Assembly: GCF_964213995.1 (NCBI RefSeq)
Contig: NW_027590159.1
Span: 1-64,000, forward strand
Direction of reading: 5' to 3'
Origin: Mustelus asterias
Lineage: Eukaryota
Length of the DNA: 64,000 bases
Shown here: positions 22,692 to 51,402 of the stretch, piece by piece
Numbering within the stretch: position 1 is the first letter of the stretch
How the letters are laid out: every line of letters begins with the position of its first letter
The notes under the pieces: generated by a model
Seen by the model: only the letters and a program-made list of their open reading frames with translations
Databases searched by the model: none
Told to the model about the DNA's origin: nothing
Position numbers and translations under genes: made by a program

Positions 22692-22845
22692 GTCTGAAGC
22701 TCAATCTTCATTCAGAGACCTCTTTTTAGGTCAAACCAAGTAAATAAACTCAAATTAAATCAGGACAAAGTAAAAGGGGCAGCTCCCCAAAAAGGAGGGG
22801 AAACAGCCCGAACAGAAATCAAAATGCAAAGGAAACTTAAAAACA

Positions 22846-25800: not shown

Positions 25801-26739
25801 CTCCAACTCCTCGAGCCTGGATTTCCGCCTCTTTGTCGACCCCCTCGCGTACCCCTGACAGAAGGTACGGACGTGAGTCTTGCCCACATCCCACCAGAGC
25901 CTCAAGGAGGGGAAGCCTCCCCGCTTCCTTCTCCAGCCGGCCCAGAATCGACGGAACGAGTCCAGGAAGCGCTCGTCCTCCAGCAGCGTGTTGTTAAAGT
26001 GCCAGTACGCGGACCCCCGCCGGATGCGAGACGGCGCAAAGTCCGCCCACACCAGGCTGTGGTCCGTGCTCGACACCGGCCGCATGGAGACCGAGGACAC
26101 GCCGGACACGTGCGCCTTCGAAATGTAAAGGCGGTCGAGCCTGGACGCTCCGACTCCAGGCCTCACGAAAGTGAAGGCGCTGGAGCCAGGATGGAGATGT
26201 CTCCAGACGTCCACCAAGTCGTGGGACCCGATCAGGTCCCGCAACTTCACCACCGCCGGAGTGCGCAGCCAGGGGCCGGTGCGGTCCCGTGCCTCGAGGA
26301 TGCAGTTGAAATCTCCCCCGAGGATAATGCATTCGCCCCCCGCGATGGTGTCGATGTGAGCGGACACTTTCTCGTAGAAAGTCGTTTGCTGCGGTCCAGC
26401 GGTCGGGGCGTAGACATTCAGCAAGTGAATGACCACGCCCCCCTCACGGACCGTCAAGTGCAGCAACCGGCCTGGCACCGGCTCCTTGACCCCCAAGATC
26501 TCCGGCTTATAATGCGGGGCCAACAAGATAGCCACCCCGCAAGAAGCGAGCGTGAGGTGGCTCATGTAGACCCCCCCTCGCCACTCCAGGAGCCATTGGG
26601 CTTCGTCTCCCGGAACGGTGTGGGTTTCCTGCAGGAAACACACCGCATACTTCCCGTCACGGAGGACCGAGAAGTTCTGGAACCTGCGGTGTGGCCCACT
26701 GCTGCCGTTGATGTTGAGGCTGGCTATGGTCACCTTCAT
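22846..26739 (-). pseudogene. Tx1 ORF2 (APE endonuclease, reverse transcriptase, C-terminal CCHC) with one in-frame TGA at 24868-24870
   Basis: SLNING, FLQETH, GGDFN, SRLDRLY, TDH (APE); KNWRPVSLLSTDYK, IDQEKAFD, SAYADDV (RT); CPFC...H...C. ORFs 26739-24868 and 24777-22846 are in the same frame. Confidence 0.95.
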
Positions 26740-26767
26740 GTCAGCAGCTTTGTGCCACCGTCACCAC

Positions 26768-28863
26768 TTAACTAGGTGTGTGGGGGGGCGCTGGCGCAAT
26801 TCTCACCAGTCCACCCCCCACCTTTTCGAGCCTGTGGAGGAACCGCAGTACCCAGCGCCGCTCTATTTTCTCCAGGCCCGCGGAGGCATGCGAGCATGCC
26901 TTCACGGACCGGACGAGCTGCGCCAGGTCCGGCCAGCGGCCGAGGGCTAGCCGGATTATGTCGGAGCGACCGGAATGGCTACGGATAAAGACCCCGAGGT
27001 CCTTGGAGGGGATGAGGGCCGACTCGGTGGGGGGCACGAGGGAGTCCCCCGCCTCGCTCTGGGCAGACTCTGAAAGTGTCCCCGTGCCCTCCACCGAGCC
27101 GCTGACCTCCTCAGGGCGGTCGCCCCTCGACTCCGAGTCCCCCGCCGCAGGACGTACGGCGGGCGGCACGGAGCCACCAACTAGCCCTAGCCCCTCCCCG
27201 ATCCCACCCCCAGGATCGGTGGAGGAGGGGTTCCCCCCGGGCTCACCTTTCCTGGATTGCGGGCCCCCGTGCGACGGCGGCCCAGCCCCCCCCCCCGCCC
27301 CAGACGCTTGGACACCCCCCAGGTCCGGTGTATCCTTCGGACTGAGGTTGGGGATGTCCAGCGTCCAAGGTCGGGACGGAGAGGACGAGTGGATCGTCTC
27401 TTCGCCGCCGCCGCACGAGGACATGAACATTGGAGTGTCGCCCCAGTCCCCCGACAGACTGAAGAAGAACTCCGGGTTGTAACCGGCCGGGTGGAACGGA
27501 ACCGTGGGGGCCCCGCTGCCACCCGGCCCCGGAGACTCCTCGCCGGGGGACTGAGGCAACACATGCTTCGATTTGCAGGGTGCCTTGCCCCCTTTTTTCA
27601 GGGGACAAGGCACAAGGACAGGTGGGGGCACGGCAGGAGATGACTCACAAGGGGGGAGGGGCACGCAGACCTCGAACTCTACGGTGCCCGAGGGGCCCCG
27701 CCTCTTTTTGTTAACCTGCCCTCGGGCAGGCGAGGCCCCTCGCCCTCCGCCCCTCTTCGCCTTGCCGCGCCCCCCCTGCTCTCCCGTCACTTCCCCCCGA
27801 GGTGGCGGCGTCGCCAGTTTTGCCGGCTCGGGGTCGCTTACCCCCCCCATGCTCGGGCCCATGATCCCGGGCGCCGGACCCAGCACTAGGCCCCGGAGAG
27901 CCCACGGGCCCGGCAGATGGTGGTGGTGGGGGGGGGGCGCAGGTGGAGACTGAGGCGGTCCCCGAGCCGGCTGCCGGGGTGGTTGGGGTGTCTTTACTGC
28001 GGGCCGGGGTTCCGGTACCCCCCTTCTTTTTCGTGGGTCCCTTCTGGGCCCTTTGGTCGCGCGGGGGCTCCGCTCCCCCCCCCGCCGGCAGCTGAGGTGG
28101 CAGCTGCTGCCGGCGTGGCCTCCCCTCGCGGGGGGGCAGATGGTACTCGCTTGGGGGGAGAGGGGGCTGCGGTGCCAGCTGCGGCCGCCTTGGGTTGGTG
28201 GTCGGCGGCCTTGGAGACGGGGCAGTTTTTCCTCACGTGCCCCGCCTCCTTACAGGCATGGCACCGCACACCGTCCGCGGACCAAAAGACCCGGTACGTG
28301 GTCCCCTCGTGGGGGACATTGAAACCTCCCTCCAGTTCCTCCTCCCGGGCCAGGCGGACAAAAACCTGGCGCCGGAAGGAGTATATGTGGCGGAGGGAGG
28401 GGTCCCGAAGGCCGAGCGGGATCGGCTGCACCCCGGACCTGACCTCCCCCAGTAGATGGAGGTGGGGGAGGAGGAGCTCACTCGGTAGGAAGGGCGGGAC
28501 GTTCGATATTACTATCTTGTGGGCGGTGGCCTCCAATGGGTCCACCGCCAGGAACGTCCCGCCCACCGTGAGCCCCTTTTCCAGGGCGAGGCGAACCGCC
28601 CGCTCGGCCTTCAGGAAGAATACGGCCCGGCCGTACATCTTTGAGGCCGCGACAATGGCTGAGGGGCCGACAACCCCAGCCATTGCCTTAACGCAGGCCT
28701 CGATAGACATGTCGGGGTGGGCGTAGCACTTCACCCCGAGCTGCCGTGTGATTAAAGAGAATGGTGGCAGGGCCTTGGGAGCGGCGGGGGCTCTGGCAGC
28801 CGCCACGCCCGCATAGGTGGGCCGAGAAGGCCCTGCCACCGGCGACGCTGGTGATGTCGCCAT
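26768..28863 (-). pseudogene. Tx1 ORF1 (RNA-binding, CCHC zinc knuckle), interrupted near 27994
   Basis: MATSPASP...IVAASKMYGRAVFFL...ISNVPPFLPSELL...SFRRQVF...CHACKEAGHVRKNC; continues as a Pro/Gly-rich ORF at 27886-26768. Confidence 0.85.
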
Positions 28864-29264
28864 GGTATCAGGGGAAGTGCTACACCCACCCCGAGACTGC
28901 CCAGATGCACGGCAGGGCGTATGTGGGATGGGGAAGATAAGGCAGGGTGGGGTAGGCGGGGAAGGGTGTAGGTGCTCTCTCCCCGGAGCGAGAGAGGGAG
29001 AGAGGAGGTTGGAGGCGCAGGAGGGAGATGAGGCACAAGGCCGGTGCCCCAGTCAGGAGGGAAAAGGGGAGGGGGTGCCGGTCCCGGGGGCAGCAGTAGT
29101 GGGTAGGGGAAATAGGAAAGGTCTTCACCCCCCCCCACTGCAGATGGAAAAGAGACAGTCCAAACGCCTTCGCCCCCCCCCCTCTCCTCCAGTCACTCCC
29201 TGTCCTCTCTTCCTCCCCCCCCCCCCCCCGGGGAGAGCGCACCCTCCAGAGGCCGGATGGCAGG

Positions 29265-29870
29265 GAAGCAGGCAGTCAGGCAGTCCAGACGGCAGGCAGG
29301 CTAGACGGCAAGCAGGCAGGCAGGCAGTCCAGACGGCAGGCAGGCAGGTAGGTAAGCAGGCCAGACGGCAGGCAGGCAGGTAAGCAGGCCAGACGGCAGG
29401 CAGGCAGGTAAGCAGGCCAGACGGCAGGCAGGCAGGTAAGCAGGCCAGACGGCAGGCAGGCAGGTAAGCAGGCCAGACGGCAGGCAGGCAGGTAAGCAGG
29501 CCAGACGGCAGGCAGGCAGGTAAGCAGGCCAGACGGCAGGCAGGCAGGTAAGCAGGCCAGACGGCAGGCAGGCAGGTAAGCAGGCCAGACGGCAGGCAGG
29601 CAGGTAAGCAGGCCAGACGGCAGGCAGGCAGGTAAGCAGGCCAGACGGCAGGCAGGCAGGTAAGCAGGCCAGACGGCAGGCAGGCAGGTAAGCAGGCCAG
29701 ACGGCAGGCAGGCAGGTAAGCAGGCCAGACGGCAGGCAGGCAGGTAAGCAGGCCAGACGGCAGGCAGGCAGGTAAGCAGGCCAGACGGCAGGTAAGCAGG
29801 CCAGACGGCAGGCAGGCAGGTAAGCAGGCCAGACGGCAGGCAGGCAACAGGCAGGCCGGGCAAGGCAGGC
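29265..29870. repeat. 28-bp minisatellite in Tx1 5' UTR (TAAGCAGGCCAGACGGCAGGCAGGCAGG)n; shorter copy at 22135-22530
   Basis: Direct inspection of near-perfect tandem units. Confidence 0.95.
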
Positions 29871-30149
29871 AGCAGCTCACCTCTCTCCTTCCTCCCCGCA
29901 GGGAGCGAAAAACAAACAAACCCAACAAAACAAAAACAAAAACCGGGCGTCTCCGTGAGCAAAAACGAAAAAAAATAAAGGTACTCACAAAAAGAAAAGA
30001 AAACAAACCCAAAATTTCCGCCCGGCTCCGACCCGGGGCCCCCCGCTACTCGGGCGAACGTGAACTCACCCCACCCCCGAAACAAAGTGCAGGCGCTGCC
30101 TCGGAGGAGGCACGTTTCAGGCCGTCTGAAGCTCAATTTTCATTCAGAG

Positions 30150-30640
30150 AGAGAGCAGCAGCAGCTTCGCTGGGCAGGAATGAGCAGCTGAACAAGCTCA
30201 TTGTGCAACTTCCGCATTCAGACAATGTGGGAGCTCTGATTGGCTGGAGGATTAAAGAACTTCCGGTCCTCCAGAGTTTCCATTGGTCAAACCCCGCTGA
30301 CAGACAATGAGGGGCGGAGCCCCACGTGGGGGTGGGCGGGACTTTGTCCTCCAGCCGCGCTGAGCTGTTGTCCAATGGGAAAGGCAGGAAGAGCCGGACA
30401 GACAATGGTCAGTGCGCCGGCTTTGTCCCGGCCCCGCCCCACAATGGCACATGCGCATTCCCCCCAAAATCTGCACATGCGCACCTTTGATTCACGGCCC
30501 CTTACTAGCTCTGGCCAACAGGAAGAGTTGGAGGACCGGAAGGATTCTGGTCCCCAGCCATTGAAAGCGCGGGCCTTGTGTGAGTGAAGATGGAGTTTCA
30601 GAGAGAGTCAAACTTCTTCCTGTCGGCCACATCTGTGAGT
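30150..30640. promoter_or_regulatory. Bidirectional (head-to-head) ZNF-type CpG promoter with two divergent non-coding exon-1 arms
   Basis: Several CCAAT/ATTGG boxes, GC boxes, GCACATGCGCA (NRF1-like) twice, and inverted CTTCCGGTCCTCCA / TGGAGGACCGGAAG ETS-like modules. The right arm 30565-30640 matches the minus-strand ZNF exon 1 at 55448-55530. Confidence 0.8.
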
Positions 30641-33600
30641 GGGAAAGATTGGATTGTCCAGCCAGTCCACCATATTGGCCGTTCGCTTTGCGTGTTGGCC
30701 AGTATAGTGTGCTCCAGGCAGGGGGCGGGCAGAGGATAAGGAGTTCAAGGCGGGCTTAATGCGCGCCTTGCGGTGAGCTTTTGGAAATGTGGCCGCTGGG
30801 AGGAACGCCTTGGTCGGCGTGAAGTTTCTGTTTCAAGTGCTTGGGTTCGTGACTTGTGCAAGAACTTTTTGTTTCGGCTGGGGCTTGTTGAATGCTGCTC
30901 TCGCTGGGATTCCTGTGCCTTGAAAGGCGTGGCCCAGGTAGATGCAATCTCGGAAGACCCAAGCCAGGGAGGAGCCATTTGGGAACTATGGTTTCGGAAG
31001 GTTCAGCCGCGGAAGGTGTGACCGCAGACGGTGCAGCCCCAGTGGGTGTGATTTTGGAAGTTCTGGCCCGGAGTGGTGGACTTTGGAGGACTGTAGTTGA
31101 GCGTTGTCGACTTCGGACGGTGGAATGTTGATGGGCGAAGCTCTGGAAGGCGATGCCTCCGAAATGTTTCACAATTGTATGGTTGTTCATGGATTGTTTG
31201 TTATTGTAATATGTGGTTTTCCTGTTATGGTAGTTGGTGGTTTGTTCCGGCCCCCGTCTATTTTCTTGCGTTATTTGTGGCCTGGGGGGCATCCCCCCCT
31301 GGATGGAGTCACCCCCGGGGGGTGTGACATCCACTTGGGGAAAGTTCTGGGTGGTGAAGCCCCGGACATAGTAACACCAGAGGGATTTTTATTCTCCGGG
31401 AGAAAAATTGGGAAGGCAGGCCCGAACTGAGTACCCTGGAGAGACTCTCCCACCGCCCCGGCTGAAATTCCGGAAGGCAGTCCGGATTGAGTAGGCGGGG
31501 TGGTTTCCCCATTTCCCCCCTCCGGCTGAACATCCGTAAGGTGTAACCCCCCGGATATGAGTACCACTGGAGGGTTGCATCCCCCGGCAGGTGGACAAAC
31601 CCAGGGGACGGTGCCCTTATGCTTCAGTGTTTATTTTTTTGTTGTGTACAGTTGTAGTGTTGTGTTAATGTTTGTAGATTTGTAGATTATGATTTGTAAA
31701 TGGAGGTGTATTTTGAGGGCAATGCCCTGGAAAACTGTAATTGACGATGAACTCTTCCGAAATGGAAGGTAGTAATTGATAAATGGATGGTGTTAGCCAT
31801 CGGTAATGTATTTTTCATGAATTGTTTGTTATTGTAATATGTGGTTTTCCTGTTATGGTAGTTGGTGGTTTGTTCCGGCCCCCGTCTATTTTCTTGCATT
31901 ATTTGTGGCCTGGGGGGCATCCCCCCCTGGATAAAGTCACCCCCGGGGGGTGTGACATCCACTTGGGGAAAGTTCTGGGTGGTGAAGCCCCGGACATAGT
32001 AACACCAGAGGGATTTTTATTCTCCGGGAGAAAAATTGGGAAGGCAGGCCCGAACTGAGTACCCTGGAGAGACTCTCCCACCGCCCCGGCTGAAATTCCG
32101 GAAGGAATTCCGGATTGAGTAGGCGGGGTGGTTTCCCCCATTTCCCCCCTCTGGCTGAACATCCGTAAGGTGTAACCCCCGGATATGAGTACCACTGGAG
32201 GGTTGCATCCCCCGGCAGGTGGACAAACCCAGGGGACGGTGCCCTTATGCTTCAGTGTTTATTTTTTGTTGTGTACAGTTGTAGTGTTGTGTTAATGTTT
32301 GTAGATTTGTAGATTATGATTTGTAAATGGAGGTGTATTTTGAGGGCAATGCCCTGGAAAACTGTAATTGACGATGAACCCTTCCGAAATGGAAGGTAGT
32401 AACTGATAAATGGATGGCATTAGCCATTGGTAATGTATTTTTTTTACATTTGTTCTTTGTGTATTTGTAATTGTTTTGTATTAACGTATTTGTAATAAAC
32501 AAAAAGAAATCCACATCTGTGAGTGGGAAAGATTGGATTGTCCAGCCAGTCCACCATATTGGCCGTTCGCTTTGCGTGTTGGCCAGTATGGTGTGCTCCA
32601 GGCAGGGGGCGGGCAGAGGATAAGGAGTTCAAGGCGGGCTTAATGCGCGCCTTGCGGTGAGCTTTTGGAAATGTGGCCGCTGGGAGGAACGCCTTGGTCG
32701 GCGTGAAGTTTCTGTTTCAAGTGCTTGGGTTCGTGACTTGTGCAAGAACTTTTTGTTTCGGCTGGGGCTTGTTGAATGCTGCTCTCGCTGGGATTCCTGT
32801 GCCTTGAAAGGCGTGGCCCGGGTGGATGCAGTCTCGGAGGGCCCAAGCCAGGGAGGAGCCATTTGGGAACTATGGTTTCGGAAGGTTCAGCCGCGGAAGG
32901 TGTGACCCCAGACGGTGCAGCCCCAGTGGGTGTGATTTTGGAAGTTCTGGCCCGGAGTGGTGGACTTTGGAGGACTGTAGTTGAGCGTTGTCGACTTCGG
33001 ACGGTGGAATGTTGATGGGCGAAGCTCTGGAAGGCGATGCCTCCGAAATGTTTCACAATTGTATGGTTGTTCATGGATTGTTTGTTATTGTAATATGTGG
33101 TTTTCCTGTTATGATAGTTGGTGGTTTGTTCCGGCCCCCGTCTATTTTCTTGCGTTATTTGTGGCCTGGGGGGCATCCCCCCCTGGATAAAGTCACCCTC
33201 GGGGGGTGTGACATCCACTTGGGGAAAGTTCTGGGTGGTGAAGCCCCGGACATAGTAACACCAGAGGGATTTTTATTCTCCGGGAGAAAAATTGGGAAGG
33301 CAGGCCCGAACTGAGTACCCTGGAGAGACTCTCCCACCGCCCCGGCTGAAATTCCGGAAGGGATTCCGGATTGAGTAGGTTCGGGGTGGTTTCCCCATTT
33401 CCCCCCTCCGACTGAACATCCGTAAGGTGTAACCCCCGGATATGAGTACCACTGGAGGGTTGCATCCCCCGGCAGGTGGACAAACCCAGGGGACGGTGCC
33501 CTTATGCTTCAGTGTTTATTTTTTGTTGTGTATAGTTGTAGTGTTGTGTTAATGTTTGTAGATTTGTAGATGATGATTTGTAAATGGAGGTGTATTTTGA

Positions 33601-36600
33601 GGGCAATGCCCTGGAAAACTGTAATTGATGATGAACCCTTCCGAAATGGAAGGTAGTAATTGATAAATGGATGGTGTTAGCCATCGGTAATGTATTTTTC
33701 AGATTTGTTCTTTGTTCATTTGTAATTGTTTTGTAATATCGTGTTTGTACTAACCAACGGAAAATCTTTGCATTGTTTGTGGCCTGGGGGGTATCCCCCC
33801 CCCCCCCCCCTTGGATAGAGTGACCCCCGGGGGGTGTGACATCCAGTTGGGGAAAGTGTCCGGGGCACCCAGAGGGGTAACACCGGGGGGGTTTTGTTCT
33901 CCGGGAGAAAAATTGGGAAGGCAGGCCGAATTGAGTATCCCGGAGAGCTTTTCTCACCGCCCCAGCCGAAAATCCGGAAGGCAGTCCGGATTGAGTAGGT
34001 TCGGGGTGGTTTTCCTGTCCCCCCGCCTCCAGTCGAACATCCGTCAGGTGGAACCCCCGGACCTGAGTACCTCTGGAGGGTTGCATCCCCCGGCAGGGGA
34101 AAAACCCAGGGGACGGTGCCCTTATGCTTCAGTGTTTATTTTTTGTTGTGTACAGTTGTAGTGTTGTGTTCATGTTTGTAGATTTGTAGATTATGATTTG
34201 TAAATGGAGGTGTATTTTGAGGGCAATGCCCTGGAAAATTGTAATTGACGATGAACCCTTCCGAAATGGAAGGTAGTAACTGATAAATGGATGGCGTTAG
34301 CCATTGGTAATGTATTTTTTTCACATTTGTTCTTTGTGTATTTGTAACTGTTTTGTATTAACGTATTTGTAATAAACAAAAAGAAACCAACATCTGTGAG
34401 TGGGAAAGATTGGATTGTCCAGCCAGTCCACCATATTGGCCGTTCGCTTTGCGTGTTGACCAGTATGGTGTGCTCCAGGCAGGGGGCGGGCAGAGGATAA
34501 GGAGTTCAAGGCGGGCTTAATGCGCGCCTTGCGGTGAGCTTTTGGAAATGTGGCCGCTGGGAGGAACGCCTTGGTCGGCGTGAAGTTTTTGTTTCAAGTG
34601 CTTGGGTTCGTGACTTGTGCAAGAACTTTTTGTTTCGGCTGGGGCTTGTTGAATGCTGCTCTCGCTGGGATTCCTGTGCCTTGAAAGGCGTGGCCCAGGT
34701 AGATGCAATCTCGGAAGACCCAAGCCAGGGAGGAGCCATTTGGGAACTATGGTTTCGGAAGGTTCAGCCGCGGAAGGTGTGACCCCAGACGGTGCAGCCC
34801 CAGTGGGTGTGATTTTGGAAGATCTGGCCCGGAGTGGTGGACTTTGGAGGACTGTAGTTGAGCGTTGTCGACTTCGGACGGTGGAATGTTGATGGGCGAA
34901 GCTCTGGAAGGCGGTGCCTCCGAAATGTTTCACAATTGTATGGTTGTTCATGGATTGTTTGTTATTGTAATATGTGGTTTTCCTGTTATGATAGTTGGTG
35001 GTTTGTTCCGGCCCCCGTCTATTTTCTTGCGTTATTTGTGGCCTGGGGGGCATCCCCCCCTGGATAAAGTCACCCCCGGGGGGTGTGACATCCACTTGGG
35101 GAAAGTTCTGGGTGGTGAAGCCCCGGACATAGTAACACCAGAGGGATTTTTATTCTCCGGGAGAAAAATTGGGAAGGCAGGCCCGAACTGAGTACCCTGG
35201 AGAGACTCTCCCACCGCCCCGGCTGAAATTCCGGAAGGGATTCCGGATTGAGTAGGTTCGGGGTGGTTTCCCCCATTTCCCCCCTCCGGCTGAACATCCG
35301 TAAGGTGTAACCCCCGGATATGAGTACCACTGGAGGGTTGCATCCCCCGGCAGGTGGACAAACCCAGGGGACGGTGCCCTTATGCTTCAGTGTTTATTTT
35401 TTGTTGTGTACAGTTGTAGTGTTGTGTTAATGTTTGTAGATTTGTAGATTATGATTTGTAAATGGAGGTGTATTTTGAGGGCAATGCCCTGGAAAACTGT
35501 AATTGATGATGAACCCTTCCGAAATGGAAGGTAGTAATTGATAAATGGATGGTGTTAGCCATTGGTAATGTATTTTTCAGATTTGTTCTTTGTTCATTTG
35601 TAATTGTTTTGTAATATCGTGTTTGTACTAACCAACGGAAAATCTTTGCATTGTTTGTGGCCTGGGGGGTATCCCCCTCCCCCCCCCCCTGGATAGAGTG
35701 ACCCCCGGGGGGTGTGACATCCAGTTGGGGAAAGTGTCCGGGGCACCCAGAGGGGTAACACCGGGGGGGTTTTGTTCTCCGGGAGAAAAATTGGGAAGGC
35801 AGGCCGAATTGAGTATCCCGGAGAGCTTTTCCCACCGCCCCAGCCGAAAATCCGGAAGGCAGTCCGGATTGAGTAGGTTCGGGGTGGTTTTCCTGTCCCC
35901 CCGCCTCCAGTCGAACATCCGTCAGGTGGAACCCCCGGACCTGAGTACCTCTGGAGGGTTGCATCCCCCGGCAGGGGAAAAACCCAGGGGACGGTGCCCT
36001 TATGCTTCAGTGTTTATTTTTTGTTGTGTACAGTTGTAGTGTTGTGTTAATGTTTGTAGATTTGTAGATTATGATTTGTAAATGGAGGTGTATTTTGAGG
36101 GCAATGCCCTGGAAAACTGTAATTGATGATGAACCCTTCCGAAATGGAAGGTAGTAACTGATAAATGGATGGCGTTAGCCACTGGTAATGTATTTTTTTC
36201 ACATTTGTTCTTTGTGTATTTGTAATTGTTTTGTATTAACGTATTTGTAATAAACAAAAAGAAACCAACATCTGTGAGTGGGAAAGATTGGATTGTCCAG
36301 CCAGTCCACCATATTGGCCGTTCGCTTTGCGTGTTGGCCAGTATAGTGTGCTCCAGGCAGGGGGCGGGCAGAGGATAAGGAGTTCAAGGCGGGCTTAATG
36401 CGCGCCTTGCGGTGAGCTTTTGGAAATGTGGCCGCTGGGAGGAACGCCTTGGTCGGCGTGAAGTTTCTGTTTCAAGTGCTTGGGTTCGTGACTTGTGCAA
36501 GAACTTTTTGTTTCGGCTGGGGCTTGTTGAATGCTGCTCTCGCTGGGATTCCTGTGCCTCGAAAGGCGTGGCCCAGGTAGATGCAATCTCGGAAGACCCA

Positions 36601-39600
36601 AGCCAATAAGGAGCCATTTGGGAACTATGGTTTCGGAAGGTTCAGCCGCGGAAGGTGTGACCGCAGACGGTGCAGCCCCAGTGGGTGTGATTTTGGAAGT
36701 TCTGGCCCGGAGTGGTGGACTTTGGAGGACTGTAGTTGAGCGTTGTCGACTTCGGACGGTGGAATGTTGATGGGCGAAGCTCTGGAAGGCGATGCCTCCG
36801 AAATGTTTCACAATTGTATGGTTGTTCATGGATTGTTTGTTATTGTAATATGTGGTTTTCCTGTTATGATAGTTGGTGGTTTGTTCCGGCCCCCGTCTAT
36901 TTTCTTGCGGTATTTGTGGCCTGGGGGGCATCCCCCCCTGGATAAAGTCACCCCCGGGGGGTGTGACATCCACTTGGGGAAAGTTCTGGGTGGTGAAGCC
37001 CCGGACATAGTAACACCAGAGGGATTTTTATTCTCCGGGAGAAAAATTGGGAAGGCAGGCCCGAATTGAGTACCCTGGAGAGACTCTCCCACCGCCCCGG
37101 CTGAAATTCCGGAAGGGATTCCGGATTGAGTAGGCGGGGTGGTTTCCCCCATTTCCCCCCTCCGGCTGAACATCCGTAAGGTGTAACCCCCGGATATGAG
37201 TACCACTGGAGGGTTGCATCCCCCGGCAGGTGGACAAACCCAGGGGACGGTGCCCTTATGCTTCAGTGTTTATTTTTTGTTGTGTACAGTTGTAGTGTTG
37301 TGTTAATGTTTGTAGATTTGTAGATTATGATTTGTAAATGGAGGTGTATTTTGAGGGCAATGCCCTGGAAAACTGTAATTGATGATGAACCCTTCCGAAA
37401 TGGAAGGTAGTAATTGATAAATGGATGGTGTTAGCCATCGGTAATGTATTTTTCAGATTTGTTCTTTGTTCATTTGTAATTGTTTTGTAATATCGTGTTT
37501 GTACTAACCAACGGAAAATCTTTGCATTGTTTGTGGCCTGGGGGGTATCCCCCCCCCCCCCTGGATAGAGTGACCCCCGGGGGGTGTGACATCCAGTTGG
37601 GGAAAGTGTCCGGGGCACCCAGAGGGGTAACACCGGGGGGGTTTTGTTCTCCGGGAGAAAAATTGGGAAGGCAGGCCGAATTGAGTATCCCGGAGAGCTT
37701 TTCCCACCGCCCCAGCCGAAAATCCGGAAGGCAGTCCGGATTGAGTAGGTTCGGGGTGGTTTTCCTGTCCCCCCGCCTCCAGTCGAACATCCGTCAGGTG
37801 GAACCCCCGGACCTGAGTACCTCTGGAGGGTTGCATCCCCCGGCAGGGGAAAAACCCAGGGGACGGTGCCCTTATGCTTCAGTGTTTATTTTTTTGTTGT
37901 GTACAGTTGTAGTGTTGTGTTAATGTTTGTAGATTTGTAGATTATGATTTGTAAATGGAGGTGTATTTTGAGGGCAATGCCCTGGAAAACTGTAATTGAC
38001 GATGAACCCTTCCGAAATGGAAGGTAGTAATTGATAAATGGATGGTGTTAGCCATCGGTAATGTATTTTTCATGGATTGTTTGTTATTGTAATATGTGGT
38101 TATCCTGTTATGGTAGTTGGTGGTTTGTTCCGGCCCCCGTCTATTTTCTTGCGTTATTTGTGGCCTGGGGGGCATCCCCCCCTGGATAAAGTCACCCCCG
38201 GGGGGTGTGACATCCACTTGGGGAAAGTTCTGGGTGGTGAAGCCCCGGACATAGTAACACCAGAGGGATTTTTATTCTCCGGGAGAAAAATTGGGAAGGC
38301 AGGCCCGAACTGAGTACCCTGGAGAGACTCTCCCACCGCCCCGGCTGAAATTCCGGAAGGGATTCCGGATTGAGTAGGCGGGGTGGTTTCCCCCATTTCC
38401 CCCCTCCGGCTGAACATCCGTAAGGTGTAACCCCCGGATATGAGTAGCACTGGAGGGTTGCATCCCCCGGCAGGTGGACAAACCCAGGGGACGGTGCCCT
38501 TATGCTTCAGTGTTTATTTTTTGTTGTGTACAGTTGTAGTGTTGTGTTAATGCTTGTAGATTTGTAGATTATGATTTGTAAATGGAGGTGTATTTTGAGG
38601 GCAATGCCCTGGAAAACTGTAATTGACGATGAACCCTTCCGAAATGGAAGGTAGTAACTGATAAATGGATGGCGTTAGCCATTGGTAATGTATTTTTTCA
38701 CATTTGTTCTTTGTGTATTTGTAATTGTTTTGTATTAACGTATTTGTAATAAACAAAAAGAAACCAACATCTGTGAGTGGGAAAGATTGGATTGTCCAGC
38801 CAGTCCACCATATTGGCCGTTCGCTTTGCGTGTTGGCCAGTATAGTGTGCTCCAGGCAGGGGGCGGGCAGAGGATAAGGAGTTCAAGGCGGGCTTAATGC
38901 GCGCCTTGCGGTGAGCTTTTGGAAATGTGGCCGCTGGGAGGAACGCCTTGGTCGGCGTGAAGTTTCTGTTTCAAGTGCTTGGGTTCGTGACTTGTGCAAG
39001 AACTTTTTGTTTCGGCTGGGGCTTGTTGAATGCTGCTCTCGCTGGGATTCCTGTGCCTTGAAAGGCGTGGCCCAGGTAGATGCAATCTCGGAAGACCCAA
39101 GCCAGGGAGGAGCCATTTGGGAACTATGGTTTCGGAAGGTTCAGCCGCGGAAGGTGTGACCCCAGACGGTGCAGCCCCAGTGGGTGTGATTTTGGAAGTT
39201 CTGGCCCGGAGTGGTGAACTTTGGAGGACTGTAGTTGAGCGTTGTCGACTTCGGACGGTGGAATGTTGATGGGCGAAGCTCTGGAAGGCGATGCCTCCGA
39301 AATGTTTCACAATTGTATGGTTGTTCATGGATTGTTTGTTATTGTAATATGTGGTTTTCCTGTTATGATAGTTGGTGGTTTGTTCCGGCCCCCGTCTATT
39401 TTCTTGCGTTATTTGTGGCCTGGGGGGCATCCCCCCCTGGATAAAGTCACCCCCGGGGGGTGTGACATCCACTTGGGGAAAGTTCTGGGTGGTGAAGCCC
39501 CGGACATAGTAACACCAGAGGGATTTTTATTCTCCGGGAGAAAAATTGGGAAGGCAGGCCCGAACTGAGTACCCTGGAGAGACTCTCCCACCGCCCCGGC

Positions 39601-41897
39601 TGAAATTCCGGAAGGGATTCCGGATTGAGTAGGTTCGGGGTGGTTTCCCCCATTTCCCCCCTCCGGCTGAACATCCGTAAGGTGTAACCCCCGGATATGA
39701 GTACCACTGGAGGGTTGCATCCCCCGGCAGGTGGACAAACCCAGGGGACGGTGCCCTTATGCTTCAGTGTTTATTTTTTGTTGTGTACAGTTGTAGTGTT
39801 GTGTTAATGTTTGTAGATTTGTAGATTATGATTTGTAAATGGAGGTGTATTTTGAGGGCAATGCCCTGGAAAACTGTAATTGATGATGAACCCTTCCGAA
39901 ATGGAAGGTAGTAATTGATAAATGGATGGTGTTAGCCATTGGTAATGTATTTTTCAGATTTGTTCTTTGTTCATTTGTAATTGTTTTGTAATATCGTGTT
40001 TGTACTAACCAACGGAAAATCTTTGCATTGTTTGTGGCCTGGGGGGTATCCCCCTCCCCCCCCCCCTGGATAGAGTGACCCCCGGGGGGTGTGACATCCA
40101 GTTGGGGAAAGTGTCCGGGGCACCCAGAGGGGTAACACCGGGGGGGTTTTGTTCTCCGGGAGAAAAATTGGGAAGGCAGGCCGAATTGAGTATCCCGGAG
40201 AGCTTTTCCCACCGCCCCAGCCGAAAATCCGGAAGGCAGTCCGGATTGAGTAGGTTCGGGGTGGTTTTCCTGTCCCCCCGCCTCCAGTCGAACATCCGTC
40301 AGGTGGAACCCCCGGACCTGAGTACCTCTGGAGGGTTGCATCCCCCGGCAGGGGAAAAACCCAGGGGACGGTGCCCTTATGCTTCAGTGTTTATTTTTTG
40401 TTGTGTACAGTTGTAGTGTTGTGTTAATGTTTGTAGATTTGTAGATTATGATTTGTAAATGGAGGTGTATTTTGAGGGCAATGCCCTGGAAAACTGTAAT
40501 TGATGATGAACCCTTCCGAAATGGAAGGTAGTAACTGATAAATGGATGGCGTTAGCCACTGGTAATGTATTTTTTTCACATTTGTTCTTTGTGTATTTGT
40601 AATTGTTTTGTATTAACGTATTTGTAATAAACAAAAAGAAACCAACATCTGTGAGTGGGAAAGATTGGATTGTCCAGCCAGTCCACCATATTGGCCGTTC
40701 GCTTTGCGTGTTGGCCAGTATAGTGTGCTCCAGGCAGGGGGCGGGCAGAGGATAAGGAGTTCAAGGCGGGCTTAATGCGCGCCTTGCGGTGAGCTTTTGG
40801 AAATGTGGCCGCTGGGAGGAACGCCTTGGTCGGCGTGAAGTTTCTGTTTCAAGTGCTTGGGTTCGTGACTTGTGCAAGAACTTTTTGTTTCGGCTGGGGC
40901 TTGTTGAATGCTGCTCTCGCTGGGATTCCTGTGCCTCGAAAGGCGTGGCCCAGGTAGATGCAATCTCGGAAGACCCAAGCCAATAAGGAGCCATTTGGGA
41001 ACTATGGTTTCGGAAGGTTCAGCCGCGGAAGGTGTGACCGCAGACGGTGCAGCCCCAGTGGGTGTGATTTTGGAAGTTCTGGCCCGGAGTGGTGGACTTT
41101 GGAGGACTGTAGTTGAGCGTTGTCGACTTCGGACGGTGGAATGTTGATGGGCGAAGCTCTGGAAGGCGATGCCTCCGAAATGTTTCACAATTGTATGGTT
41201 GTTCATGGATTGTTTGTTATTGTAATATGTGGTTTTCTTGTTATGATAGTTGGTGGTTTGTTCCGGCCCCCGTCTATTTTCTTGCGGTATTTGTGGCCTG
41301 GGGGGCATCCCCCCCTGGATAAAGTCACCCCCGGGGGGTGTGACATCCACTTGGGGAAAGTTCTGGGTGGTGAAGCCCCGGACATAGTAACACCAGAGGG
41401 ATTTTTATTCTCCGGGAGAAAAATTGGGAAGGCAGGCCCGAACTGAGTACCCTGGAGAGACTCTCCCACCGCCCCGGCTGAAATTCCGGAAGGGATTCCG
41501 GATTGAGTAGGCGGGGTGGTTTCCCCATTTCCCCCCTCCGGCTGAACATCCGTAAGGTGTAACCCCCGGATATGAGTACCACTGGAGGGTTGCATCCCCC
41601 GGCAGGTGGACAAACCCAGGGGACGGTGCCCTTATGCTTCAGTGTTTATTTTTTGTTGTGTACAGTTGTAGTGTTGTGTTAATGTTTGTAGATTTGTAGA
41701 TTATGATTTGTAAATGGAGGTGTATTTTGAGGGCAACATGCACTGGAAAACTGTAATTGACGATGAACCCTTCCGAAATGGAAGGTAGTAACTGATAAAT
41801 GGATGGCGTTAGCCATTGGTAATGTATTTTTTCACATTTGTTCTTTGTGTATTTGTAATTGTTTTGTATTAACGTATTTGTAATAAACAAAAAGAAA
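30641..41897 (+). repeat. Tandem array of six non-coding retroelement-like units (1.24-2.5 kb), starting at 30641, 32525, 34402, 36280, 38779 and 40657
   Basis: Each unit has a ~550-bp head, 1-3 copies of a ~620-bp module and a tail ending AATAAACAAAAAGAAA, and is preceded by C(C/A)ACATCTGTGAGT. No recognisable protein ORF. Confidence 0.9.
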
Positions 41898-42011
41898 CCA
41901 ACAGTGTTGTTGTGTGTGTTAGCAGCATTGAATTTGCTGCTGCAAATCGTCAACATTTCTTTGCATGTGAAAGCACTGGTTGAAAGAACTGAGCAGCTTT
42001 CTCTGCCCTGT

Positions 42012-42082
42012 GCATTGGTGGTTCAGTGGTAGAATTCTTGCCTGTCATGCGGGAGGCCTGGGTTCGATTCCTGGGCAATGCA
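42012..42082 (+). tRNA. tRNA-Gly(GCC)-derived gene/pseudogene with anticodon changed to GTC
   Basis: GCATTGGTGGTTCAGTGGTAGAATTCTTGCCT-GTC-ATGCGGGAGGCCTGGGTTCGATTCCTGGGCAATGCA. The body is the vertebrate tRNA-Gly-GCC with CpG decay; A/B boxes are intact and a TTTT follows at about 42093. Confidence 0.85.
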
Positions 42083-42893
42083 AAGCCGCTTCTTTTACCT
42101 TAAAAGAGGCCCACATCTGTGAGTAAAACACTTTCTTTTCTCCCCCTTTCCATTTCTTTTCTCATTCTGGGGGAAATTGGGAACTTGCAGCAACTGAAGG
42201 GAAAGGAAGTGAATCCAGTCTGTACATTCCACACATTGTTAGCCCAGTCAGATAGACAAATATCTGTCTGGCAGCCTGCATGGAGATTTTCAGCTCTCTG
42301 TGTCCAGGAGAGGAAGCAGTGAGCACGGATCTGTTAATCAGCCTCAATCAGCACCTTCAGGAGAATTGGGAGGGTGAATATTAGATACAGCAGAGTGAGA
42401 ATGGAGGGAGAGTGTGTGGGATGGAGATTTACAGCTTTTCGGGAATGAGAGAGGAAAGAATGTTCCATAGAAACTAGAATTGTCTGTTCTGAATTTCTAT
42501 CCTGTGCTGACATTGATGAATTTTTCAAACTCGTTTACAGGATATGAGAAGGTGAGGATTGACAGACAGAGGATTGAAACAAACATCACATCAGCATCTG
42601 ACACCCTCACTCAATTCATCGGACCTGAATATTATCGGCCTTTGAATCCTGGAGAAATGTTTCTCTGTTCTGTCTGCGTCAACAGGCCTTTAATATCAAT
42701 GTGACTGGAAAAGCACCAAGACACAGATACACCCGAGTGGGAGTGTTCCAGTGCACTGAGTGTGGAAAGAGCTTTAACCAGTTACACAGCCTGAAAATAC
42801 ATCGCAGCATTCACAGCGGGAGAGACTGTACCCGTGTTCTGTGTGAGATTTAACTGATTGTTTAACCTGGAGAGTCACAAGGACACCTGCACC

Positions 42894-44324
42894 ATGGAGA
42901 AACCGTGGAAATGTGGGGACTGTGGGAAGAGATACAGAGCCCCCTGTAAACTGGAAATTCATCGACGCAATCACACCGAGGAGAGGCCATTCATCTGCTC
43001 TGTGTGTGGGCAGAGATTCACTCGGTTATCTCATCTGCAGCGACATCAGCAGGTTCACACTGGAGAAAGAGCGTTCATCTGCTTTGAGTGTGGGAACGGA
43101 TTCGCTCATTTACCCGATCTGCAGAGACACCAGCGCGTTCACACTGGAGAGAGACCATTCACCTGCTTGGTGTGTGGGAAAGGATTTATGCAGTTATCCA
43201 ATCTGTCAAAACACAAAGTCACTCACAGCAATGAGAGACCCTTTAAATGCTCTGACTGTGGGCGTGATTTCAAAAGCTCTCGGGAACTGATGATTCACCA
43301 GCGCGTTCATACTGGGGAGAGACCGTTCAGCTGCTTGGTGTGTGGGAAAGGATTGACGCAGTTATCTAACCTGTCAAAACACAAAGTCACTCACAGCCAG
43401 GAGAGACCCTTTAAATGCTCTGACTGTGGGAGTGGTTTCAAAAGCTCTCGGGAACTGATTATCCACCAGCGCATTCACACTGGGGAGAGACCATTCAGCT
43501 GCTCTCACTGCGCAAAGAAATTTAGAGCATCATCCCACCTGCGGATACACCAGCGAGTTCACACTGGGGAGAGACCGTTCACCTGCTCTGTGTGTGGGAA
43601 GGGATTCACTCAGTCATCCAGCCTGCAGAACCACAATCTCACTCACACCAATGAGAGACCGTTTAAATGTTCTGACTGTGGGCGTGATTTCAAAAGCTCT
43701 CGGGAACTGATGATTCACCAGCGCGTTCATACTGGGGAGAGACCGTTCAGCTGCTTGGTGTGTGGGAAAGGATTGACGCAGTTATCTAACCTGTCAAAAC
43801 ACAAAGTCACTCACAGCCAGGAGAGACCCTTTAAATGCTCTGACTGTGGGAGTGGTTTCAAAAGCTCTCGGGAACTGATTATCCACCAGCGCATTCACAC
43901 TGGGGAGAGACCATTCAGCTGCTCTCACTGCGCAAAGAAATTTAGAGCATCATCCCACCTGCGGATACACCAGCGAGTTCACACTGGGGAGAGACCGTTC
44001 ACCTGCTCTGTGTGTGGGAAGGGATTCACTCAGTCATCCAGCCTGCAGAACCACAATCTCACTCACACCAATGAGAGACCGTTTAAATGTTCTGACTGTG
44101 GGCGTGATTTCAAAAGCTCTCGGGAACTGATGATCCACCAGCGCACTCACACTGGGGAGAGACCGTTCAGCTGCTCTCACTGCTCAAAGAGATTTAGAAC
44201 ATCATCCCACCTGCAGATACACCAGCGAGTTCACACTGGGGAGAGACTGTTCACTTGCTGTGTGTGTGGGAAGGGATTCACTCAGTCATCCAGCCTGCGG
44301 ACACACCAGCAAGTTCACAAGTGA
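42894..44324 (+). CDS. KRAB-less C2H2 zinc-finger protein, 17 fingers (gastrula zinc finger XlCGF-like)
   Basis: MEKPWKCGDCGK... with HTGERPF linkers, intact ORF. Upstream non-coding exon donor CATCT|gtgagt at 42118/42119 and acceptor tttacag|G at 42540. Confidence 0.9.
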   Translation: MEKPWKCGDCGKRYRAPCKLEIHRRNHTEERPFICSVCGQRFTRLSHLQRHQQVHTGERAFICFECGNGFAHLPDLQRHQRVHTGERPFTCLVCGKGFMQLSNLSKHKVTHSNERPFKCSDCGRDFKSSRELMIHQRVHTGERPFSCLVCGKGLTQLSNLSKHKVTHSQERPFKCSDCGSGFKSSRELIIHQRIHTGERPFSCSHCAKKFRASSHLRIHQRVHTGERPFTCSVCGKGFTQSSSLQNHNLTHTNERPFKCSDCGRDFKSSRELMIHQRVHTGERPFSCLVCGKGLTQLSNLSKHKVTHSQERPFKCSDCGSGFKSSRELIIHQRIHTGERPFSCSHCAKKFRASSHLRIHQRVHTGERPFTCSVCGKGFTQSSSLQNHNLTHTNERPFKCSDCGRDFKSSRELMIHQRTHTGERPFSCSHCSKRFRTSSHLQIHQRVHTGERLFTCCVCGKGFTQSSSLRTHQQVHK

Positions 44325-50880: not shown

Positions 50881-51402
50881 ACATATTCCAGACTTTCACT
50901 AGACTGTAGGTGGATATCAGATTGATATATTTCATTCAACCACACCCAAGGTGAGTTATTCCAATTCCTTTATTGTCCAGGACAATATATTCACAATATC
51001 TTTAAAACAGAAGTTAAACATTCCCATTTGATTTCAGACAGTAACATATTCTATTAGTTTGTTCTTTATTGTCGATGTCAGGCTGGGGTTGTTCTCCTTG
51101 GAGCAAAGGAGGTTGAGGGGAGATTTGATAGAGGTGGACAAGATTCTGACAGGTTTAGATAAGGTGGACAAAGAAAAGCTGTTCCTATTAGCTGATGGGA
51201 CAAGGACGAGGGGGACACAGATTTCTTGTTTTGGGTCAGAGATGCAAGGGATGGGGCGGCGGCGGGGGGGGGGGGGTGGATGTGAGGAAGAATATTCTGA
51301 TGCAGCGAATGGTAATGACCTGAAACTCGCTGCCTACGAGGGTGGAGGAAGTGGAGAAAATAAACAATTAAAAAGGAAATTGGATGGACATCTGGGATGT
51401 TC

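What the first reader, a model, noticed from the sequence alone, without database searches (positions are those of the whole stretch)
30627..41903. Non-coding, poly(A)-signal-terminated element arrayed immediately behind a regenerated 5' splice site
Every unit begins straight after C(C/A)ACATCT|GTGAGT, the ZNF exon-1/intron-1 junction (native copies 42111-42124 and 55462-55448), and ends AATAAACAAAAAGAAA like a LINE-mobilised RNA. Insertion at intron position +7 keeps the donor intact. The host could splice out the whole 11.3 kb array (donor 30634 to acceptor 42540), while unspliced RNA polyadenylated at a unit end would be the element's transposition intermediate. That would be a self-hiding, promoter-borrowing, non-autonomous retroelement. 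No ORF or Pol III box is visible. Caveat: the last unit is followed only by CCAACA and then unrelated sequence, so the right-hand duplication is incomplete.
Basis: partly seen in the sequence, partly recalled or inferred. Interest (0 to 1): 0.85.

Follow-up and report, generated by a model that had tools for sequence, protein, structure and literature searches.

The report
Repeat array inserted behind ZNF splice donor
A 1.9-kb non-coding sequence, copied six times in a row, lies in a block of DNA inserted just behind the first splice site of a shark zinc-finger gene, probably by a neighbouring jumping gene, and the insertion duplicated the splice site so the gene can still be spliced.

Summary
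Six head-to-tail units (30641-41897) each follow C(C/A)ACATCT|GTGAGT and end AATAAACAAAAAGAAA.

The array is not the whole story. Together with a 207-nt piece (41904-42110), it sits between two perfect 14-nt copies of the exon-1-end/donor sequence (30627-30640 and 42111-42124) of one ZNF gene. That piece holds a tRNA-Asp copy. Its last bases before the right copy match the 3' terminus of the window's LINE at 15 of 17 positions.

- The unit shares no significant tail with the LINE and has no poly(A) tail or Pol III boxes.
- It has no copy at the 3 other exon-1 ends in the window.
- Hybrid subrepeats show that local unequal recombination reshapes the array, and I infer it also expanded it.

Whether the unit is a multi-copy mobile family, and whether it is transcribed or spliced out, could not be tested.

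Unchecked first-stage notes report similar donor-site insertions elsewhere in this genome.

The parts
30359..30565 (+). ZNF-type promoter region of the interrupted gene. The motif at 30512-30552 is shared with paralogue P. An inverted copy of the motif at 30244-30290 faces the LINE.
   Evidence: (30512-30552 vs 55834-55794 at 90%; 30244-30290 vs 55788-55835 at 77%)
30566..30634 (+). Exon 1, apparently non-coding. It is a complete 'type II' exon end (no TAAAAGA block). The TSS was not determined.
30627..30640 (+). Left copy of the 14-nt target sequence CCACATCT|GTGAGT. The donor GT is at 30635.
30641..32509 (+). Unit S1 (A, alpha, alpha/beta hybrid, tail). It ends AATAAACAAAAAGAAA.
32510..32524 (+). 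Junction J1: T plus the exact 14-mer CCACATCTGTGAGT.
32525..34386 (+). Unit S2 (A, alpha, beta, tail).
34387..34401 (+). Junction J2: CCAACATCTGTGAGT, the 14-mer with 1 mismatch.
34402..36264 (+). Unit S3 (A, alpha, beta, tail).
36265..36279 (+). Junction J3.
36280..38763 (+). Unit S4 (A, alpha, beta/alpha hybrid, alpha/beta hybrid, tail). It has three B subrepeats.
38764..38778 (+). Junction J4.
38779..40641 (+). Unit S5 (A, alpha, beta, tail).
40642..40656 (+). Junction J5.
40657..41897 (+). Unit S6 (A, one alpha/beta hybrid B, tail). Its A part is identical to that of S4.
41898..41903 (+). CCAACA: a truncated junction copy or microhomology at the right end of the array.
41904..42010 (+). 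Segment X, of unknown origin. It starts with a GT-only run, has CpG o/e 0.20, and matches neither S nor the LINE.
42011..42083 (+). tRNA-Asp(GTC) copy.
42084..42110 (+). Linker plus LINE-like 3' tail. 42093-42109 matches the LINE's terminal 17 nt at 15 of 17.
42111..42124 (+). Right copy of the 14-nt target sequence, followed by the native intron.
42125..42540 (+). Native intron 1, shared with paralogue P. CpG o/e is 0.16 and the acceptor AG is at 42539-42540.
42541..44324 (+). Downstream exon with the C2H2 zinc-finger ORF (ATG at 42894, stop at 44322-44324).
22719..30155 (-). LINE with APE endonuclease, reverse transcriptase and a CCHC ORF1. Its 3' terminus ...TTTGACCTAAAAAGAGG ends at 22719. 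It is the candidate source of the insertion machinery.
55084..55834 (-). Uninterrupted paralogue P, used as the 'empty site' reference: promoter motif, exon 1, donor, intron, acceptor.

Best explanation
The array is the bulk of an 11.47-kb insertion complex (30641-42110) lodged in one ZNF gene, between two perfect 14-nt copies of its exon-1-end/donor sequence.

The most likely route is target-primed reverse transcription by the LINE family present 0.5 kb upstream. On this reading the bottom strand is nicked 8 nt upstream of the donor and the top strand just after GTGAGT. The 14-nt duplication then leaves exon 1 joined to an intact donor and makes everything inserted formally intronic.

The 3'-most component is a tRNA-Asp copy with a LINE-like tail. 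The 1.86-kb non-coding unit S came in by the same route, either as its own insertion or by template switching.

S was then amplified locally from one copy to six. The first duplication would have used the short CCA(A)CA homology; later growth used unequal homologous recombination. That recombination is still gaining and losing the internal 625-nt subrepeats.

Shown: the anatomy, the flanking repeats, the tail match and the recombinant subrepeats. Inferred: the RNA intermediate, the enzyme, the order of events and the splicing outcome.
For: 1. One gene, one interruption. Paralogue P aligns to 30512-30552 and 30566-30616 on the left. It aligns to 42098-42218 (95%), 42428-42463 and 42478-42545 on the right. 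The two break points are 5 nt apart in P.
2. Exon 1 on the left is complete. It aligns straight through with the third paralogue.
3. The exact 14-mer lies at both outer borders.
4. The LINE's terminal 17-mer has only one other match in the window at up to 3 mismatches. It lies at 42093-42109, one base before the right 14-mer. Local score is 13 and 0 of 2000 shuffles reach it.
5. The LINE encodes APE and RT.
6. CpG o/e is 0.76 in A and 0.54-0.58 in B, against 0.16-0.20 in the flanking intron and X. The units are therefore younger or less methylated than their surroundings.
7. Local recombination is visible. The A parts are 97.8-100% alike, with A4 identical to A6. The last B of units 1, 4 and 6 is alpha-type and switches to beta-type at its 3' end. 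Unit 4's middle B is beta-type and switches to alpha-type. Units 4 (3 B) and 6 (1 B) look like reciprocal products.
8. The array starts and ends in the same phase, at CCA(A)CA.
9. Array sequence exists in other data. Five runs from 4 samples and 2 studies of the same organism hold 0.49-0.62 of the sampled words of 38767-42900. Only 24% of that stretch is non-array.
10. There is a precedent for tandem elements sandwiching a 16-bp target duplication, mobilised by target-specific Tx1 (PMC4494074).
Against: - S itself has no significant 3' similarity to the LINE (36 of 500 shuffles score as well; 485 of 2000).
- S has no poly(A) tail.
- The LINE-like 17-mer also resembles the exon end of paralogue P (11 of 12). 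It could therefore be a native 'type I' exon fragment of a second, 5'-truncated gene.
- The LINE copy in this window is not itself inserted at this site. Its tail is followed by the start of another LINE 5' region.
- Segment X is unexplained.
- The last unit's junction copy is only 6 nt long.
- No other copy of S was found anywhere I could look: the rest of the window, JGI metagenomes and the protein collections. The exception is one diverged B-like ORF.
- The LINE clade (Tx1) was not verified, because the hit names are uninformative.
Confidence: 0.5

Rival explanations
1. S is a multi-copy, non-autonomous retroelement that specifically targets ZNF exon-1 donors. On this model the six units are sequential independent insertions. 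The intermediate is host-promoter-driven unspliced RNA ending at the unit's AATAAA.
For: - A 14/15-nt target-like sequence lies at all 5 internal junctions and the left border.
- The unit ends 10 nt after its only AATAAA, a normal distance to a cleavage site.
- There is a precedent for sequential tandem insertions (PMC4494074).
- A diverged B-like ORF exists in an unrelated ENA contig. It is 66-67% identical over about 120 aa to alpha copies.
- Small runs of the same organism hold array words.
- Unchecked first-stage notes report donor-site insertions, a 1940-letter one among them, on other pieces of the genome. These are leads only.
Against: - 0 of 3 other exon-1 ends in the window are occupied, while one site would have been hit six times.
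- The hybrid B copies and the identical A4 and A6 show recombination, not independent copies.
- There is no poly(A) and no significant LINE tail.
- RNA started at the host promoter should carry the whole of exon 1, but the junctions keep only its last 8 nt.
- The right end lacks a full duplication.
Confidence: 0.2
2. Purely DNA-level history with no retrotransposition. S is ordinary sequence behind the donor of one ZNF gene. It was tandemly duplicated by microhomology (CCA(A)CA) and unequal crossing-over. The array then adjoins a tRNA gene and a second, 5'-truncated ZNF paralogue. The repeated donor is simply part of the repeat unit.
For: - The array begins and ends in phase at CCA(A)CA, as a tandem duplication predicts.
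- The structure is hierarchical (tail homologous to the spacer before beta; A, alpha and beta parts) and shows recombinant subrepeats.
- AATAAA-N16-CA followed by a GT-only run at the right end looks like a native poly(A) site.
- The left exon end is 'type II' and the right piece is 'type I', as if from two genes.
- No other copy of S was seen.
- Other donor-containing tandem arrays are noted in this genome (unchecked).
Against: - It needs two paralogues truncated at nearly complementary points.
- It needs an identical 14-mer that differs from both other paralogues.
- The right piece is closer to the LINE tail (15 of 17) than to P's exon; P is not within 3 mismatches of the 17-mer.
- CpG content of the units is far above that of the neighbouring intron.
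Confidence: 0.25
3. Assembly artefact: a collapsed or expanded repeat.
For: None directly. Tandem repeats of 98-99% identity are error-prone in assemblies.
Against: - The units differ in structure (1, 2 or 3 B copies) and by scattered substitutions.
- The window has no N.
- Runs from two studies hold array words.
Confidence: 0.03

Closest known systems
Tx1-Mar LINEs and SINEU-3 of crocodilians (Kojima 2015, PMC4494074; passages read)
   Same: - A target-specific APE-type LINE and non-autonomous passengers share one target sequence.
- The target duplication is about 16 bp.
- Tandem passenger copies sandwich the duplication.
- Small-RNA-derived pieces are added by template switching.
- Some passengers share no 3' terminus with any LINE.
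   Different: - The target there is a Mariner transposon. Here it is the first-exon/5' splice-site boundary of a Pol II zinc-finger gene.
- SINEU elements are short with poly(A) tails. S is 1.86 kb, has internal subrepeats and has no poly(A).
- Six copies here against mostly two there.
- Multi-copy status of S is untested.
Spliced-leader-exon-specific LINEs (named NeSL in PMC4640811, passages read; SLACS, CZAR and CRE are recalled)
   Same: Retroelements that insert at a fixed point in a short non-coding 5' exon of a multicopy gene. This is regarded as a 'safe' target.
   Different: - Those encode restriction-like endonucleases and target trans-spliced leader genes.
- Here the enzyme is APE-type, the genes are cis-spliced, and the duplication regenerates the donor.
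Macrosatellites / higher-order tandem repeats such as D4Z4 or DXZ4 (recalled, no paper opened)
   Same: Kilobase units at 98-99% identity, with internal substructure and gain and loss of subrepeats by unequal exchange.
   Different: - This array is bounded by a target duplication.
- It sits directly behind a splice donor, next to a LINE-tailed tRNA copy.
- Copy-number variation was not tested.
SVA/LAVA composite VNTR retroelements (PMC3287187 and PMC5174737: search listing and start of abstract only)
   Same: Non-coding, non-autonomous composite elements with an internal variable tandem repeat and a poly(A) signal, mobilised in trans by a LINE.
   Different: - SVA has an Alu-like part, a SINE-R part, a poly(A) tail and thousands of dispersed copies with L1-type target sites.
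- None of these was shown for S.
LINE-mediated chimeric retrocopies by template switching (small RNA fused 5' of a LINE or mRNA 3' part; cited within PMC4494074)
   Same: The order passenger, then small RNA (tRNA), then LINE 3' end, flanked by a target duplication.
   Different: - The classical cases have poly(A) and L1 target sites.
- Here the tail is a 17-nt LINE terminus at a specific target, and the 5' passenger has been tandemly amplified.

Membership tests
LINE-dependent, target-specific non-autonomous retroelement (SINEU-3/Tx1-Mar type) | Flanked by a target-site duplication of LINE-typical length | tested here: inconclusive
   The whole complex is flanked by an exact 14-mer. All 5 internal junctions carry it with 0-1 mismatch. 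The last unit is followed by only CCAACA.
LINE-dependent, target-specific non-autonomous retroelement (SINEU-3/Tx1-Mar type) | 3' terminus shared with the partner LINE, or a poly(A) tail | tested here: not met
   For S, only AAAAAGA is shared (485 of 2000 shuffles score as well; 36 of 500), and there is no A run beyond AAAAAGAAA. For the tRNA-Asp piece the feature is met: 15 of 17, with 0 of 2000 shuffles reaching the score.
LINE-dependent, target-specific non-autonomous retroelement (SINEU-3/Tx1-Mar type) | Same insertion site as the autonomous LINE | tested here: inconclusive
   The LINE's terminal motif ACCTWAAAAGAGG precedes the target 14-mer region in the right flank and in P. That is 3 matches at up to 1 mismatch against 0.23 expected. 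The LINE copy in the window is not at that site.
LINE-dependent, target-specific non-autonomous retroelement (SINEU-3/Tx1-Mar type) | Many copies at independent target sites | not testable with these tools
   0 of 3 other exon-1 ends in the window are occupied. nhmmer found no A or B relative outside the array.
LINE-dependent, target-specific non-autonomous retroelement (SINEU-3/Tx1-Mar type) | Transcribed RNA intermediate | not testable with these tools
Pol III SINE | Internal A and B boxes or a tRNA/7SL/5S head in the unit | tested here: not met
   0 matches at up to 1 mismatch on either strand of the array. ARAGORN and Rfam find no small-RNA gene in the array.
Macrosatellite / higher-order tandem repeat | Head-to-tail kilobase units of high identity | tested here: met
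   Six units. The A parts are 97.8-100% identical. Whole units are 93-99% identical to unit 2.
Macrosatellite / higher-order tandem repeat | Signs of unequal exchange (variable subrepeat number, hybrid subrepeats) | tested here: met
   1, 2 or 3 B copies per unit. 4 of the 12 B copies examined switch type near their 3' end, judged on 88 diagnostic columns.
Macrosatellite / higher-order tandem repeat | Restricted to one locus, copy number variable between individuals | not testable with these tools
   No genome or read-level access.
Chimeric retrocopy by template switching | Order 5'-passenger, small RNA, LINE 3' end-3', between target duplications | tested here: met
   S array, X, tRNA-Asp, LINE-like 17-mer, between exact 14-mers.
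Chimeric retrocopy by template switching | Poly(A) tail at the 3' end | tested here: not met
   The complex ends ...AAAAGAGGC directly before the 14-mer.
Tx1 clade (partner LINE) | APE endonuclease plus RT in ORF2 | tested here: met
   Exo_endo_phos 4.2e-11 and RVT_1 1.6e-18.
Tx1 clade (partner LINE) | RT phylogeny places it in the Tx1 clade | not tested
   The one search hits (turtles, sturgeon, teleosts, Heterodontus francisci at 64%) carry no clade names. 'Tx1' comes only from first-stage notes.

The most novel reading that the evidence does not exclude
S, the tRNA copy and the LINE tail together form a composite, SVA-like non-autonomous retrotransposon. Its partner would be a LINE lineage whose endonuclease is specific for the exon-1/5' splice-site boundary of a shark C2H2 zinc-finger gene family. 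Because the 14-nt target duplication regenerates the donor, every insertion is spliced out with intron 1. It is also co-transcribed from the host promoter. That would be a target-specific LINE/SINE system living on the first splice site of Pol II protein-coding genes, in the very gene family that usually silences transposons.
Probability: 0.2. Interest if true: 0.8.

Novelty: new variant of a known kind. Interest (0 to 1): 0.55.

Why it matters

A system that lands a fixed 8 nt before the first splice donor of a zinc-finger gene family would add a new kind of 'safe harbour', one that the spliceosome hides. It rebuilds the donor through its target duplication.

It would also show how a single retro-insertion can seed a kilobase-unit tandem array that lengthens an intron about 28-fold, from 0.42 kb to 11.9 kb.

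My two searches aimed at this listed no paper describing it. That covers only the open-access library that was searched.

If the array is only a local duplication, it is an ordinary intronic macrosatellite.

Tried and rejected
1. Shared LINE/S 3' tail. Local and end-anchored alignments are not significant. One search was anchored 2 nt short of the true LINE end; this was corrected.

2. S start homologous to the exon-1 START motif. Score 10, and 96 of 1000 shuffles score as well. Rejected.

3. Structured RNA in subrepeat B. z = -1.66 on the + strand and -0.92 on the - strand, no better than shuffles. In Rfam E-value mode, run on units 1 and 2, there were only sub-threshold hits (SNORA64 18.5-24.3 bits against a gathering score of 35, P37, snoZ6, sR5). 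Rejected as chance.

4. Coding potential. The 3 unit ORFs tested have no Pfam hit. The 192-aa ORF has no homologue. The 9 exact look-ups were absent. The full HMMER scan with the 194-aa ORF gave 1 hit (P0001, E = 2.2e-6, a singleton from a 2771-nt ENA contig). It matches B copies by tblastn, but I could not fetch its DNA.

5. Other copies. The rest of the window has none by blastn or by nhmmer with A and B profiles. The two JGI metagenome scans were empty. The findings look-up by sequence was blank.

6. 'Segmental insertion into mid-exon 1 with a 6-nt CTTCTT duplication'. Rejected, because the left exon aligns without a break to the third paralogue.

7. LINE clade. The hit names are uninformative.

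8. TSD length of Xenopus Tx1L. The two papers are not held, so I make no claim about it.

9. U1 snRNP suppression of a poly(A) site by a nearby 5' splice site is recalled knowledge. No paper was opened for it.

10. I did not ask for any supplementary files. Supplementary figures S3-S5 of PMC4494074 (target alignments) may bear on the comparison.


Full report
WHAT IS THERE. Between 30627 and 41903 the + strand carries six head-to-tail units. Start-to-start spacing is 1884, 1877, 1878, 2499 and 1878 nt, and the last unit is 1258 nt. Every unit is preceded by C(C/A)ACATCT|GTGAGT. CATCTGTGAGT occurs 7 times in the window against 0.07 expected, and the seventh copy is at 42114. All 6 units end AATAAACAAAAAGAAA. 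Unit boundaries inside a tandem array are arbitrary, so only the two outer ends and comparison with paralogues can say what happened.

INTERNAL BUILD. A unit has three parts: a 554-nt part A, ~625-nt subrepeats B, and a 75-nt T-rich tail.
- B comes in two variants, alpha and beta, 86-87% alike and separated by 88 diagnostic columns.
- The layouts are: u1 A-alpha-alpha; u2, u3 and u5 A-alpha-beta; u4 A-alpha-beta-alpha; u6 A-alpha.
- The tail is homologous to the spacer in front of beta, so it belongs to the older 625-nt period. The AATAAA exists only in the terminal tail.
- The last B of units 1, 4 and 6 is alpha-type and turns beta-type in its last four diagnostic columns. Unit 4's middle B does the reverse.
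- The A parts are 97.8-100% identical, and A4 is identical to A6.

These are footprints of unequal homologous exchange. Units 4 (three B) and 6 (one B) look like reciprocal products.

WHAT THE UNIT IS NOT.
- Not coding. The 3 unit ORFs tested have no Pfam hit. The 192-aa ORF has no homologue. The 9 exact ORF look-ups were absent.
- Not a Pol III SINE. There are 0 A-box or B-box matches at up to 1 mismatch, and no tRNA or Rfam gene in the array.
- Not a recognisable RNA family. In E-value mode, run on units 1 and 2, there were only sub-threshold hits.
- Not unusually structured. Fold z-scores are -1.66 and -0.92.
- Not found elsewhere in the window, by blastn or by nhmmer with A and B profiles at E up to 10.

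THE FLANKS. An uninterrupted paralogue P lies on the minus strand at 55084-55834. It aligns to the left flank at its promoter motif (30512-30552, 90%) and the exon-1 5' part (30566-30616, 86%). It aligns to the right flank from 42098 onward: 122 nt at 95%, then 36 nt at 97% and 69 nt at 88% up to the acceptor at 42540. The two break points are 5 nt apart in P.

The left exon 1 is complete. It aligns without a break to a third paralogue (56148-56201). Both lack a 7-nt TAAAAGA block that P and the right flank have.

The exact 14-mer CCACATCTGTGAGT stands at 30627-30640, at the first internal junction (32511) and at 42111-42124. The other four junctions read CAACATCTGTGAGT. After 42124 the native intron continues.

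So 30641-42110 is an 11.47-kb block between two perfect 14-nt direct repeats in what reads as a single gene: promoter, exon 1, donor | block | the same 14 nt, intron, acceptor, zinc-finger exon (ORF 42894-44324).

After the sixth unit come CCAACA, then 107 nt of unknown origin (X), then a tRNA-Asp copy. Next come 9 nt, then TTTTACCTTAAAAGAGG (42093-42109), one C, and the right 14-mer.

That 17-mer matches the 3' terminus of the LINE in this window (TTTGACCTAAAAAGAGG, 22719-22735, minus strand) at 15 of 17 positions. It is the only other match in 64 kb at up to 3 mismatches, and 0 of 2000 shuffles reach its local score.

The LINE encodes an APE endonuclease, a reverse transcriptase and a CCHC ORF1. 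Its 5' end abuts the same bidirectional promoter region from the other side.

A shorter form of the motif, ACCTWAAAAGAGG, also precedes the donor-proximal 9 nt in P. That gives 3 matches at up to 1 mismatch against 0.23 expected. The LINE tail and the 'type I' exon end are therefore related sequences, which leaves some ambiguity. The right-flank piece is nevertheless nearer the LINE (15 of 17) than P is; P is not within 3 mismatches.

MOST LIKELY HISTORY (confidence about 0.5). A LINE-type target-primed reverse transcription event at this site had its 3' junction 8 nt upstream of the donor and made a 14-nt staggered-cut duplication that includes GTGAGT. It inserted a tRNA-Asp/LINE-tail piece and the non-coding sequence S, either in separate events or as one template-switch chimera.

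The left duplicate keeps exon 1 attached to a consensus donor. All inserted DNA therefore lengthens intron 1 from 0.42 to 11.9 kb instead of breaking the gene. S was then amplified locally. I give three reasons for preferring local amplification:
- The array starts (CCACA|TCTG) and ends (CCAACA|GTGT) in one phase, as a microhomology-seeded tandem duplication predicts.
- The recombinant subrepeats are there.
- One site hit six times while 0 of 3 other exon-1 ends in the window are hit is hard to reconcile with independent insertions.

CpG o/e in the units (0.76 in A, 0.54-0.58 in B) against 0.16-0.20 in X and the native intron fits a young arrival.

Each internal AATAAA is followed within 20 nt by a consensus 5' splice site. 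From recalled knowledge, U1 snRNP bound close to a poly(A) site suppresses its use. I offer that only as an inference about why the array might be tolerated.

WHAT SPEAKS AGAINST THIS.
- S's own end shares only AAAAAGA with the LINE tail, which is not significant.
- There is no poly(A) tail.
- X is unexplained.
- The window's LINE copy is followed by another LINE 5' region, not by the 14-mer.
- A purely DNA-level reading survives at about 0.25. In it, two paralogues (one 3'-truncated, one 5'-truncated) flank a native tandem repeat. It is helped by the native-looking poly(A) site at the array's right end, AATAAA-N16-CA followed by a GT-only run.

This means a multi-copy, self-hiding, promoter-borrowing retroelement with sequential insertions. 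I put it at about 0.2. It is not excluded. It has a direct precedent in SINEU-3 and Tx1-Mar, where tandem copies sandwich a 16-bp duplication (PMC4494074, passages read).

EVIDENCE FROM OUTSIDE THE WINDOW IS THIN.
- Five runs of one organism (4 samples, 2 studies, one run of only 33 million letters) hold 0.49-0.62 of the sampled words of 38767-42900. Only 24% of that stretch is non-array, so array sequence is present in independent data. None of these runs is on record as RNA.
- Other organisms hold 0.13-0.17 or less, and I cannot say which part they hold.
Depth, junctions, splicing and RNA ends could therefore not be examined.
- One diverged relative of subrepeat B exists as an ORF on a 2771-nt ENA contig. 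It is 66-67% identical over about 120 aa to alpha copies.

FIRST-STAGE NOTES. Notes on other pieces of the same genome speak of Tx1 LINEs, tRNA-headed pieces with a Tx1 tail, and a 'non-autonomous partner' at ZNF first-exon donors. They are unchecked AI notes. They led me to compare the right flank with the LINE tail, a comparison I then tested here. They do not count as support.

COMPARISON WITH WHAT IS KNOWN. [quoted passage not shown] The first-exon/5' splice-site boundary of a cis-spliced protein-coding gene family is not on that list. My two searches on this listed no paper describing it, within the open-access library only.

If the retro-origin holds, this is a new variant of a known kind. 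If not, it is an ordinary intronic macrosatellite that happens to include a donor.

VERDICT.
- Observation: confirmed.
- Interpretation: partly supported.
- Interest: 0.55.
- The decisive test is a whole-genome search for solo copies and an empty site. I could not run it.

Noticed in passing
window 22100-22735 and 29250-30155: The LINE (minus strand) is followed at its 3' end by a second copy of its own 5' region. That region holds a ZNF exon-1-like START motif and a 28-nt minisatellite of about 21 copies at 29259-29846, with a similar array at about 22130-22500. The upstream copy carries an extra stretch beginning GTGAGT of about 85-130 nt (the two copies do not align cleanly there) that the downstream copy lacks.
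   Followed up: partly
window 42011-42110: A tRNA-Asp(GTC) copy (46.7 bits) is followed after 9 nt by a 17-nt match to the LINE 3' terminus. The whole is about 100 nt and looks like a tRNA-headed, LINE-tailed SINE-like piece.
   Followed up: partly
window 30566-30640, 42084-42124, 55448-55535 (-), 56148-56201: The exon-1 ends come in two forms. One has a TAAAAGA block (P and the right flank). The other lacks it (the left exon and the third paralogue). The block is part of the motif shared with the LINE tail.
   Followed up: partly
window 30150-30570 and 55794-56165: ZNF 5' modules stand head to head around short shared promoter regions with inverted copies of one motif.
   Followed up: no
P0001 (ENA contig of 2771 nt, not fetchable): This is the only protein-level relative of the unit among 1.84 billion representatives. 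It is a 154-aa ORF that tblastn matches to B copies across the array, up to 67% identity over about 120 aa.
   Followed up: partly
window 43119-44175: The zinc-finger ORF contains 2.5 copies of a 420-nt block at 95% identity, a recent internal duplication of five-finger blocks.
   Followed up: no
window 42640-42893: Upstream of the ATG at 42894 there are finger-like codons broken by stops and frame changes. The 5' part of the coding exon looks decayed.
   Followed up: no
window 15028-15092, 50824-50890, 51408-51460, 55160-55205, 55544-55611, 63678-63748: A short dispersed repeat (85-95% alike, about 45-65 nt matched) recurs on both strands. Two copies lie inside paralogue P's promoter and intron.
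   Followed up: no
window 20860-21831: A 323-aa ORF has a weak zf-BED hit (E = 0.0016), just beyond the truncated second LINE copy.
   Followed up: no
runs X6-X20: Runs of about ten other organisms hold 5-17% of the sampled words of 38767-42900, small and large runs alike. Which part is shared is unknown.
   Followed up: no
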